Shown: positions 21,570-21,980, counted from the first letter of the stretch. The stretch: 64,000 nt of DNA from Octopus sinensis (GCF_006345805.1 NC_042999.1:169012001-169076000), one strand, 5' to 3'. Numbers and translations are program-made. The notes: a model not told the origin generated them from the sequence alone.

Positions 21570-21980
21570 AATAACAATTAACAGGTGTTGGCCCTAAAGA
21601 GGGCCTTTGAACGTTCCCTATGAAATATCTCTGCAGTAGTGCTGCCAGAATACATGAATCCAATGGTAACAATTTAATCTTGCTGGTGCTGAAGAGAGCC
21701 TTGTATTGTTTACTCTTAAGAGTCTCAGTGGTGGTGCTGCCAGCAAAGACAAATCCAGTGATAACAATTTATAGTTGGTGGCCCTGAAGAGGACCTTTTA
21801 ATGTTCACTTTGAATTATTTCAGCAGCGGTGCTGCCAGCAAAGATGAATCTGATGGTAACAATTTAAACTTGGTGGCCCTGAAGAGGGCCTTGGATCATT
21901 TACTCTTAAGAGTCCCAGCTGCAGAGCTGTCAGCAAAGACAATTCCGATTAGAGATGGTAGCCCTTAAGAAGTCCTTCAC
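21570..21980 (-). repeat. Tandem array of five ~95-bp units, each with a histone-3'-stem-loop-like hairpin
   Basis: 16-nt hairpins start at 21590, 21685, 21780, 21875 and 21960. Minus-strand reading of unit 4 is AAGGCCCT-CTTC-AGGGCCACCA. Units 1/3 and 2/4 are more alike, giving a 190-bp dimer. Confidence 0.85.

What the first reader, a model, noticed from the sequence alone, without database searches (positions are those of the whole stretch)
21570..21980. Phased tandem array of histone-mRNA-type 3' stem-loops with no histone gene
Seen: five 16-nt hairpins start at 21590, 21685, 21780, 21875 and 21960, giving spacings of 95, 95, 95 and 85 bp, although the units are clearly diverged from each other. 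On the minus strand they read AAA-GGCCCT-CTTT-AGGGCC-AACA, AA-GGCTCT-CTTC-AGCACC-AGCA, AAAA-GGTCCT-CTTC-AGGGCC-ACCA, CAA-GGCCCT-CTTC-AGGGCC-ACCA and a degenerate fifth. Units 1/3 and 2/4 are more alike, forming a 190-bp higher-order repeat. Established: replication-dependent histone mRNAs end in a 6-bp-stem, 4-nt-loop hairpin (GGYYYU-loop-ARRRCC) with A-rich 5' and ACCNA-like 3' flanks, bound by SLBP. U7-dependent processing needs a purine-rich downstream element. Here both flanks match as well as the stem, the first loop base is C rather than the usual vertebrate U, there is no purine-rich downstream element, and no histone ORF is in the window. Inference: this could be a satellite amplified from a histone 3' end, or a non-histone RNA (lncRNA or retroelement UTR) carrying multiple SLBP-binding sites as a decoy or for cell-cycle-linked stability. 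The 95-bp period is not a multiple of 3, so it is not a protein repeat.
Basis: partly seen in the sequence, partly recalled or inferred. Interest (0 to 1): 0.75.

Follow-up and report, generated by a model that had tools for sequence, protein, structure and literature searches.

The report
Decaying minisatellite carrying histone-like hairpins
A 440-base tandem repeat in retroelement-rich animal DNA carries three hairpins that look almost exactly like the ends of histone messages, but the matching locus in a related genome has let every one of them decay, so it is most likely an ordinary old repeat rather than a new RNA device.

Summary
On the minus strand, three of the five are intact stem-loops with a 6-bp stem and 4-nt loop. 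They match Rfam Histone3 (RF00032) end to end at 29.0, 27.5 and 25.2 bits. That is below the 34-bit gathering score, but they are the only such hits in 128 kb. They differ from documented SLBP-binding hairpins (GGCCCUUUUCAGGGCC) only by C instead of U at loop position 1. No histone coding remnant, purine-rich downstream element or second copy exists in the window. A protein-library search recovered one homologous locus from another genome (Logan contig L001, 83% identical, matching unit by unit). There, all hairpins are broken or deleted, the 95-bp phase is lost to deletions, and no Histone3 hit remains. Hairpin cores diverge no more slowly than the rest of the array (88% vs 82%, p=0.21), and the array evolves like its flanks. 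Verdict: an old, single-locus, neutrally decaying minisatellite whose founder unit carried a histone-type hairpin. Whether the founder came from a histone 3' flank or arose by chance is undecided. A function as a multi-SLBP-site RNA is not supported. Low interest.

The parts
21546..21985 (-). Tandem array of about 4.5 units of 95 bp with a partial 190-bp higher-order structure
   Evidence: TRF, the repeat finder, unit alignment A1, self-blastn
21590..21605 (-). Unit 1 hairpin CAAA-GGCCCU-CUUU-AGGGCC-AACA; intact, -11.3 kcal/mol
   Evidence: Rfam Histone3 match 21610-21565, 29.0 bits; fold. The L001 counterpart has GG->AA at the stem base
21685..21700 (-). Unit 2 degenerate hairpin ACAA-GGCUCU-CUUC-AGCACC-AGCA; two stem mismatches
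   Evidence: No Histone3 hit; does not fold as a stem-loop; 18 bp covering it (21687-21704) are deleted in L001
21780..21795 (-). Unit 3 hairpin AAAA-GGUCCU-CUUC-AGGGCC-ACCA; intact with one G.U pair, -8.7 kcal/mol
   Evidence: Histone3 match 21800-21755, 25.2 bits; fold. The L001 counterpart loses the top U-A pair (U->G) and folds with a 5-bp stem and 6-nt loop
21875..21890 (-). Unit 4 hairpin CCAA-GGCCCU-CUUC-AGGGCC-ACCA; intact, -11.4 kcal/mol
   Evidence: Histone3 match 21895-21850, 27.5 bits; fold. The L001 counterpart is AGCCUU-CUUC-AGGGUC-ACAA, -3.2 kcal/mol
21960..21975 (-). Unit 5 degenerate hairpin GGACUU-CUUA-AGGGCU-ACCA in a truncated unit
   Evidence: Sequence; does not fold as a stem-loop
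21712..21723 (.). 12-nt perfect palindrome ACTCTTAAGAGT in unit 2; the same palindrome recurs in unit 4 at 21902-21913
   Evidence: the repeat finder I5. Both copies are altered in L001
21478..22116 (.). Block homologous to Logan contig L001 37-639: the array plus about 70 bp of left flank and about 130 bp of right flank, all unique in the window
   Evidence: blastn, MAFFT A2 at 83% identity in aligned columns, no homology beyond either edge
21100..21350 (-). Context only: GC- and CpG-rich block with TGACGTCA and CCGGAAG motifs, ending in AAG|GTAGGT on the minus strand; a putative promoter and non-coding first exon 200-650 bp downstream of the array on the hairpin strand (inference)
   Evidence: Sequence and CpG observed/expected profile; no Pfam hit for its 54-aa ORF
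22148..22571 (-). Context only: SINE copy with an (AAAGAGTA)n tail that bounds the unique segment; a second, split copy lies at 20138-20751
   Evidence: 9-13 other copies in the window at 73-90% identity

Best explanation
This is an old, single-locus minisatellite in non-coding DNA between SINE insertions.

How it formed (inferred): a 95-bp founder segment that already held a histone-type hairpin (AAA-GGCCCU-CUUC-AGGGCC-ACCA) was duplicated by slippage or unequal exchange. It diverged, was duplicated again as a 190-bp dimer, and then froze.

What has happened since (shown): since the split from the genome represented by L001, the copies have evolved independently and at the rate of the surrounding unique DNA. 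The hairpins are inherited passengers. Three happen to survive in this genome, and none survives in histone form in the other. The locus most likely does nothing as an RNA element.

Origin of the founder hairpin (open): my estimate is about 40% a captured fragment of a histone gene 3' flank that acquired a U-to-C change in the loop, about 45% a fortuitous GC-rich palindrome, and the remainder some other source.
For: - The array and hairpins are real.
- It is a single locus. There is no other copy in 64 kb. One related cluster was found among 1.84 billion representatives, and it holds one sequence on three short contigs.
- The homologous locus L001 matches unit by unit. Diagonal identities are 0.83-0.87 against 0.53-0.82 off the diagonal. 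The array therefore predates the split and has not been homogenised since.
- Array identity (83.2%) does not differ from the unique flanks (84.3% and 72.1%; p=0.35).
- Hairpin cores are 87.8% identical against 81.7% for the rest of the array (p=0.21). Stems are 30/36 identical.
- L001 has four deletions of 12-19 bp that destroy the 95-bp phase, and one removes a hairpin. TRF no longer detects a repeat there, and there is no Histone3 hit at E<=1.
- L001 hairpin energies fall from about -11 to about -3 or -4 kcal/mol, or the geometry changes.
- Two of the five units are already broken in the window itself.
- There is no histone coding remnant, no purine-rich downstream element, and no ORF over 55 aa.
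- All matches are below the RF00032 gathering score.
Against: - Within the array, the 23-nt hairpin block ranks 2nd of 95 circular windows of that size (0.83 vs 0.66 identity, column-permutation p about 0.01). The finding was selected for exactly this property, so the test is biased.
- All 6 stem differences map to the L001 branch and none to the window branch. Given the background share of 14/37, P is about 0.06. Constraint limited to the window lineage is therefore not excluded.
- Infernal E-values make a purely random origin of a 29-bit full-length match improbable in 128 kb.
- Orthology of L001 is inferred, not proven, because homology stops abruptly at both edges. A dead paralogue would say less about constraint on the window copy.
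- No expression data were available.
Confidence: 0.75

Rival explanations
1. Functional RNA. A minus-strand non-coding RNA or UTR in this lineage uses the three intact hairpins as SLBP-binding sites, acting as a decoy or for S-phase-linked stability or processing. The L001 lineage has lost this function.
For: - Three hairpins are stable and would form in an array-length transcript (pair probabilities 0.80-0.99).
- They meet the stated minimal SLBP-binding requirement of the stem-loop, two 5' A's and one 3' A (PMC10388802).
- C-first loops are native in C. elegans.
- C-first loops also occur right after stop codons of non-histone ORFs in environmental eukaryotes.
- None of the 6 stem changes falls on the window branch.
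Against: - It is not conserved in the only homologue. All hairpins are lost, the spacing is lost, and the substitution rate looks neutral.
- Two of the five units are dead in the window itself.
- There is no downstream element for U7-type processing.
- Loop position 1 is C, whereas all 12 human loop variants and a bivalve's histone hairpins start with U.
- On the hairpin strand the array lies upstream of, not inside, the only promoter-like block nearby (inference).
- There is no evidence of transcription.
Confidence: 0.05
2. Internal tandem repeat of a low-copy mobile or duplicated element. On this reading the ~640-bp block 21478-22116 is a discrete unit, and L001 is a second, paralogous insertion rather than the orthologue.
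For: - Homology with L001 ends sharply at both edges. About 1 kb of L001 flank matches nothing in the window.
- From memory, not tested here: mollusc genomes are known to carry non-autonomous elements with internal tandem repeats.
Against: - There are no terminal inverted repeats. The best flanking inverted pair is 21 nt at 76% and lies inside the block.
- There is no second copy in 64 kb.
- Only one related ORF cluster, with one sequence, exists in the whole protein collection.
- In this genome, lineage-specific SINE and other insertions are frequent enough to explain the broken flanks.
Confidence: 0.12
3. DNA-level cis-regulatory repeat. The palindrome GGCCCTNNNNAGGGCC would be a repeated binding site for a dimeric factor, placed 200-650 bp from a CpG-rich promoter-like block.
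For: - The array adjoins a GC- and CpG-rich block with CRE-like and ETS-like motifs and a possible splice donor.
- The hairpin block is the best conserved part among the units.
Against: - The palindromes are not conserved in L001.
- No factor with this site was identified.
- The promoter itself is an inference.
- The spacing is not preserved.
Confidence: 0.06

Closest known systems
Replication-dependent histone mRNA 3' stem-loop (Rfam RF00032), the SLBP binding site
   Same: - 6-bp stem, 4-nt loop, GG at the base and U-A at the top, A-rich 5' flank and ACCA 3' flank.
- The stem GGCCCU/AGGGCC is identical to the mouse H4-12 and several human hairpins.
- The covariance-model alignments cover the full model.
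   Different: - The scores are 25-29 bits against a gathering score of 34.
- Loop position 1 is C, not U.
- It is not downstream of any histone ORF.
- There is no purine-rich downstream element.
- It is repeated in tandem.
- It is not conserved in the homologous locus.
Nematode-type histone hairpins with C at loop position 1 (C. elegans CTTT/CTTA; PMC1924863)
   Same: The loops here are CUUU (unit 1), CUUC (units 2-4) and CUUA (unit 5), so they share the same first loop base.
   Different: - Those hairpins follow histone genes and are almost invariant across all copies.
- The organism here is not a nematode.
- A bivalve's native histone hairpins start the loop with U (primers in PMC6210712).
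Ordinary minisatellites (VNTR-type local tandem repeats)
   Same: - Head-to-tail copies of a 95-bp unit at one locus, with higher-order structure.
- Copies diverge 20-40% from one another.
- Indels erode the phase in a relative.
- The substitution rate looks neutral.
   Different: Nothing essential. The only unusual feature is that the founder unit contained a sequence resembling a known RNA element.
Histone pseudogenes or orphons with a decayed stem-loop (e.g. Hydractinia H1.3; PMC5011920)
   Same: A histone-type hairpin that accumulates mismatches once it is no longer used.
   Different: Those retain the histone coding sequence next to the hairpin. Here no coding remnant exists within 64 kb.
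Histone-type stem-loops after non-histone ORFs in environmental eukaryote contigs
   Same: The same 21-nt hairpin with a C-first loop, and similar sub-threshold Histone3 scores of 26.7-33.8 bits.
   Different: There the hairpin is single or double and lies 21-59 nt after a stop codon. In L002 a purine-rich element follows it. Here there is no upstream ORF and five tandem copies.

Membership tests
Histone mRNA 3' stem-loop (RF00032) | 6-bp stem and 4-nt loop with GG at the base and U-A at the top | tested here: met
   Met in units 1, 3 and 4 (3 of 5); units 2 and 5 are broken
Histone mRNA 3' stem-loop (RF00032) | Covariance-model score at or above the curated gathering score (34 bits) | tested here: not met
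   29.0, 27.5 and 25.2 bits. Note that likely genuine C-first-loop hairpins in L004/L005 also score just below it, at 33.8 bits
Histone mRNA 3' stem-loop (RF00032) | Lies shortly downstream of the stop codon of a histone gene | tested here: not met
   tblastn of H1, H2A, H2B, H3 and H4 against the window: best E = 0.48, and nothing near the array
Histone mRNA 3' stem-loop (RF00032) | Purine-rich histone downstream element about 10-20 nt after the hairpin | tested here: not met
   Purine fraction 0.29-0.47 at positions +9 to +25; the conserved downstream block is UAAAUUGUUA
Histone mRNA 3' stem-loop (RF00032) | U at loop positions 1 and 3 | tested here: not met
   Position 3 is U, but position 1 is C in all five units. 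All 12 human variants start with T. C. elegans is the known exception
Histone mRNA 3' stem-loop (RF00032) | Loop and stem match this species' own histone hairpins | not testable with these tools
   No cephalopod or other eukaryotic genome collection could be searched. The only evidence is indirect and from a bivalve: stem GGCCCT, loop starting with T
Histone mRNA 3' stem-loop (RF00032) | Strong conservation of the hairpin between related genomes | tested here: not met
   Every L001 counterpart is altered or deleted; cores 87.8% vs rest of array 81.7%, p=0.21
Histone mRNA 3' stem-loop (RF00032) | Bound by SLBP, and the RNA 3' end is formed after ACCA | not testable with these tools
   Needs EMSA or CLIP and 3'-end mapping
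Minisatellite (local tandem repeat) | Head-to-tail copies of a unit of tens of bp at a single locus, non-coding | tested here: met
   TRF periods 95 and 190; unique in the window; no ORF over 55 aa, and the reading frame shifts between units
Satellite DNA (high-copy, multi-locus) | Many arrays or long arrays across the genome | tested here: inconclusive
   Only 4.5 units here. One homologous locus was found through ORF libraries. No whole-genome nucleotide search was possible
Tandem-repeat-containing non-autonomous transposon | Defined termini (inverted repeats or target-site duplication) and multiple dispersed copies | tested here: not met
   No terminal inverted repeats; no other copy in the window. 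The sharp homology edges with L001 remain unexplained

The most novel reading that the evidence does not exclude
In the window's lineage only, the array is transcribed on the minus strand and its three intact CUUC/CUUU-loop hairpins are bona fide binding sites for that animal's SLBP. This would be a lineage-specific non-histone RNA carrying several SLBP sites. The environmental contigs, in which the same hairpin follows RING-finger ORFs, would then be a precedent for histone-type 3' ends on non-histone messages.
Probability: 0.04. Interest if true: 0.65.

Novelty: new member of a known kind. Interest (0 to 1): 0.17.

Why it matters
If the hairpins were functional, this would be a rare case of SLBP-type stem-loops outside histone genes in an animal, and repeated in tandem. 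That would touch the long-held view that only replication-dependent histone mRNAs use this 3' end. The evidence instead points to a neutral relic. Its practical value is cautionary: a near-perfect, statistically unusual match to a short RNA motif, multiplied by tandem duplication, can look like a designed array, and one comparison with a homologous locus is enough to show that it drifts. The by-product (histone-type hairpins after RING-finger ORFs in uncultured eukaryotes) may be the more interesting lead.

Tried and rejected
1. Rfam at gathering thresholds on the whole window returned nothing. The permissive scan gave the three sub-threshold Histone3 hits. It also gave weak + strand hits (scaRNA ncR27, mir-22, snoU54; E 0.07-2.6), which I dismissed as noise.

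2. Coding repeat: rejected. There is no ORF over 55 aa, and the frame changes from unit to unit.

3. Histone pseudogene upstream of the array: rejected by tblastn.

4. Exact look-ups of three window ORFs in public assemblies found nothing. The collection's gene caller uses alternative genetic codes: P0001 reads through a TGA.

5. A six-frame pseudo-protein query to catch copies in any frame returned nothing, not even the embedded positive control P0001. The result is unusable.

6. The search for homologous proteins with P0001 found only P0001 itself.

7. The viral-contig scan for the hairpin gave 0 hits.

8. Literature searches for a histone stem-loop in cephalopods, in transposable elements, or as the literal CUUC hairpin sequence found nothing relevant. 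Three key older papers are not held.

9. I tried to explain L001's left edge as a repeat insertion, but found no match in the window.

10. I ran no further search on histones. There was no way to steer the subsequent look-ups to a cephalopod genome, so the species' native hairpin remains unknown.

Full report
**1. Observation**

- Tandem Repeats Finder reports 21628-21946 with period 95 (3.4 copies, 72% matches). It also reports 21571-21946 with period 190 (2.0 copies, 80% matches).
- Ungapped repeat finding gives 95-bp spacing.
- In a fixed 95-nt register on the minus strand, unit identities are 0.80 for units 2/4, 0.72 for 1/3, 0.72 for 2/3, 0.74 for 3/4 and 0.58-0.63 for the rest. The 190-bp higher order is therefore real but carried mainly by units 2 and 4.

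The five 16-nt hairpins lie at + coordinates 21590, 21685, 21780, 21875 and 21960.
- Three fold as 6-bp-stem, 4-nt-loop hairpins (-11.3, -8.7 and -11.4 kcal/mol). They would form within an array-length minus-strand RNA, with pair probabilities of 0.80-0.99.
- Unit 2 has two stem mismatches. Unit 5 has one mismatch plus wobble pairs. Neither folds as a stem-loop.

**2. Is it more than chance?**

- At Rfam gathering thresholds nothing in the window matches.
- With permissive thresholds, units 1, 4 and 3 match Histone3 (RF00032) over all 46 model positions at 29.0, 27.5 and 25.2 bits. The gathering score is 34.
- In a scan of the whole 64 kb on both strands these are the only Histone3 hits at 25 bits or more. 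Their E-values, counted over all 4227 families, are 3.4e-4, 1.3e-3 and 8.9e-3.
- They are also the only perfect GG-initiated 6/4 hairpins in the window.
- Because the three are copies of one founder, this is one event, not three. Even so, one event at about 28 bits is unlikely in random sequence of this length.
- The stem GGCCCU/AGGGCC is that of the mouse H4-12 hairpin used as an SLBP competitor (PMC1635294) and of several human histone genes (PMC7807067).
- The only departure from those hairpins is C at loop position 1. All twelve human variants start with T. C-first loops (CTTT, CTTA) are the native form in C. elegans (PMC1924863).
- In a bivalve, RT-PCR primers placed on the histone hairpins imply the stem GGCCCT and a loop beginning with T (PMC6210712). 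This is indirect, and not from a cephalopod.

**3. What is absent**

- There is no histone coding remnant anywhere in the window (tblastn with H1, H2A, H2B, H3 and H4; best E = 0.48).
- There is no purine-rich element after any hairpin.
- No ORF is longer than 55 aa, and frames shift from unit to unit.
- There is no other copy of the unit in the window.

**4. Context**

- The window is rich in non-LTR retrotransposon and mariner fragments (Pfam RVT_1, endonuclease-reverse transcriptase, Mos1 HTH).
- It also carries at least ten copies of a ~420-bp SINE with a (TACTCTTT)n tail.
- The array lies in a 1.4-kb stretch (20752-22147) that is unique in the window and bracketed by two SINE insertions.
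- On the hairpin strand, 200-650 bp downstream of the array, is a GC- and CpG-rich block (about 21350-21100). It carries TGACGTCA and CCGGAAG motifs, has no long ORF, and ends at AAG|GTAGGT.
- I infer that this block may be a promoter with a non-coding first exon. If so, the array lies upstream of that transcription start rather than inside the transcript. This is an inference only.

**5. A homologous locus**

No eukaryotic nucleotide collection was available, so I searched a 55-aa ORF spanning about 1.75 units against 1.84 billion representative proteins.
- It gave one hit, P0001 (97 aa, E = 2.4e-8).
- P0001 is encoded on a 1613-bp Logan contig from run SRR11869385 (L001).
- L001 37-639 is collinear with window 21478-22116. 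This covers the array and both unique flanks, at 83% identity in aligned columns.
- Each window unit is closest to its own L001 counterpart (0.83-0.87, against 0.53-0.82 for other pairings). The array therefore predates the separation of the two sequences and has not been homogenised since.
- P0001's cluster holds one sequence on three short contigs, and no other related cluster exists. This argues against a multi-copy family.
- The window-type ORF is also absent from the collection. Together these suggest that L001 comes from a different species, in which it is the orthologue (inference).
- A caveat remains: homology stops abruptly at both edges, and I could not explain that.

**6. What the comparison shows**

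L001 has no Histone3 match even at E <= 1, and TRF finds no tandem repeat in it. Its hairpin counterparts are:

| Unit | L001 sequence (minus strand) | Change |
|---|---|---|
| 1 | AACCCU-CUUU-AGGGCC | basal GG lost |
| 2 | (deleted) | 18-bp deletion |
| 3 | GGUCCG-CUUC-AGGGCC | top U-A lost; now a 5-bp stem with a 6-nt loop |
| 4 | AGCCUU-CUUC-AGGGUC | three stem changes; 3' flank now ACAA |
| 5 | AGACUU-CUUA-AGGUCC | changed in both arms; already degenerate in the window |

- Four deletions of 12-19 bp destroy the 95-bp phase.
- Hairpin cores (3 + 16 + 4 nt) are 86/98 identical, against 227/278 for the rest of the array (Fisher p = 0.21).
- The stems of the three intact hairpins are 30/36 identical, which is the array average.
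- The array as a whole (83.2%) evolves like its flanks (84.3% and 72.1%; p = 0.35).

**7. Residual signals in favour of constraint**

- Among the window's own units, the hairpin block ranks 2nd of 95 circular windows of its size (0.83 vs 0.66 identity; column-permutation p about 0.01). The finding was selected for conserved hairpins, so this test is biased.
- I polarised the window/L001 differences with the other units as outgroup. In the cores, 7 changes fall on the L001 branch and 1 on the window branch. In the rest of the unit the split is 23 and 14 (Fisher p = 0.24).
- All 6 stem changes fall on the L001 branch. Given the background share, P is about 0.06.
- So the common ancestor already had at least three intact hairpins. 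One lineage lost them all and the other none. This is compatible with chance, and only weakly suggestive of constraint in the window lineage.

**8. Interpretation**

The best-supported account is a neutral one. A 95-bp founder containing a histone-type hairpin was duplicated locally, re-duplicated as a dimer, and has since decayed as ordinary non-coding DNA. The duplication mechanism (slippage or unequal exchange) is inferred. The neutral rate and the lack of hairpin conservation are shown.

The origin of the founder is open.
- For capture from a histone 3' flank: the full-length model match, the natural stem variant and the correct flanks.
- Against it: the C-first loop, the well-conserved but non-purine downstream block UAAAUUGUUA in place of a downstream element, and the absence of any coding remnant.

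A functional multi-SLBP-site RNA is not excluded for the window lineage but has no positive support. I put it at about 5%. Two further rivals get about 12% and 6%: an internal repeat of a low-copy mobile element, and a DNA-level palindromic binding-site repeat near a promoter.

**9. Side observation**

A metagenome scan for the exact 21-nt hairpin with a C-first loop found four contigs, three of them independent.
- Their Histone3 scores are 26.7-33.8 bits.
- None encodes a core histone.
- In each, the hairpin lies 21-59 nt after the stop codon of a same-strand ORF. Two of these ORFs are RING-H2 finger proteins (PF13639, 36.2 and 34.5 bits).
- L003 has two hairpins 40 nt apart. L002 has a purine-rich AGAAAGAAA about 12 nt downstream of its hairpin.
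- This suggests that some uncultured eukaryotes place histone-type 3' ends on non-histone messages.
- It also shows that likely genuine C-first hairpins can score just under the Rfam gathering score. 'Below threshold' alone therefore does not disqualify the window's hairpins.

**10. Verdict**

The resemblance to histone stem-loops is genuine, and function is not supported. This is a new instance of a known kind (a minisatellite), possibly a relic of a histone 3' flank, and of low interest. The decisive missing data are this species' native histone hairpins, a genome-wide nucleotide search, more orthologues, and strand-specific RNA 3'-end data.

Noticed in passing
L002 1537-1557 (+), L003 128-148 (-), L004 2578-2598 (-), L005 1198-1218 (-): Environmental eukaryote contigs carry the same C-first-loop, histone-type hairpin 21-59 nt after the stop codons of non-histone ORFs. 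Two of these ORFs are RING-H2 finger proteins. L003 has two hairpins 40 nt apart, and L002 has a purine-rich element after its hairpin. This may be histone-type 3' ends on non-histone mRNAs in uncultured eukaryotes.
   Followed up: partly
window 21100-21350: A GC- and CpG-rich block with TGACGTCA and CCGGAAG motifs and no long ORF, ending at AAG|GTAGGT on the minus strand. It looks like a TATA-less promoter plus a non-coding first exon of an unidentified minus-strand gene.
   Followed up: partly
window 22148-22571, 20138-20751, 42064-42512, 36918-37326, 48861-49285, 27269-27712, 5660-6084 and others: At least ten copies of a ~420-bp SINE with a (TACTCTTT)n tail on the + strand, 73-90% identical to one another. 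They account for many of the 90-130-aa pseudo-ORFs that begin MLGGQTQT....
   Followed up: partly
window 4443-5426, 7334-8962, 25367-27097, 62009-63512, 29651-29941: Fragments of non-LTR retrotransposons (reverse transcriptase; endonuclease-reverse transcriptase) and a mariner-type transposase HTH domain. None is intact over its full length.
   Followed up: partly
window 13686-14126, 14505-14584, 10288-10431, 19259-19401 and others: Long TA/TATG/CA microsatellites produce dozens of sub-threshold 'microRNA' hits in the permissive Rfam scan (mir-297, mir-466, mir-3149 and others, up to 65 bits against gathering scores of 85-100). These are compositional artefacts.
   Followed up: no
window 24952-25101 and 9282-9445: Two further local tandem repeats: period 63 (2.4 copies, 80% matches) and period 81 (2.0 copies, 77% matches). 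Both lie near retroelement ORFs.
   Followed up: no
window about 61230-61330: A run of N (an assembly gap), visible as a string of X in the ORF at 61155-61436.
   Followed up: no
L001 170-463: The collection's gene call P0001 reads through a TGA (…YSWWP W SGPF…), so alternative genetic codes were used in ORF calling on Logan contigs. This explains the 'translates_to_query: no' flag for P0001, and may also explain why exact look-ups of window ORFs failed.
   Followed up: yes
tool behaviour: A 2531-aa six-frame pseudo-protein query with X at stops returned no hits, although it contains P0001 almost verbatim. Negative results from such composite queries should not be trusted.
   Followed up: no
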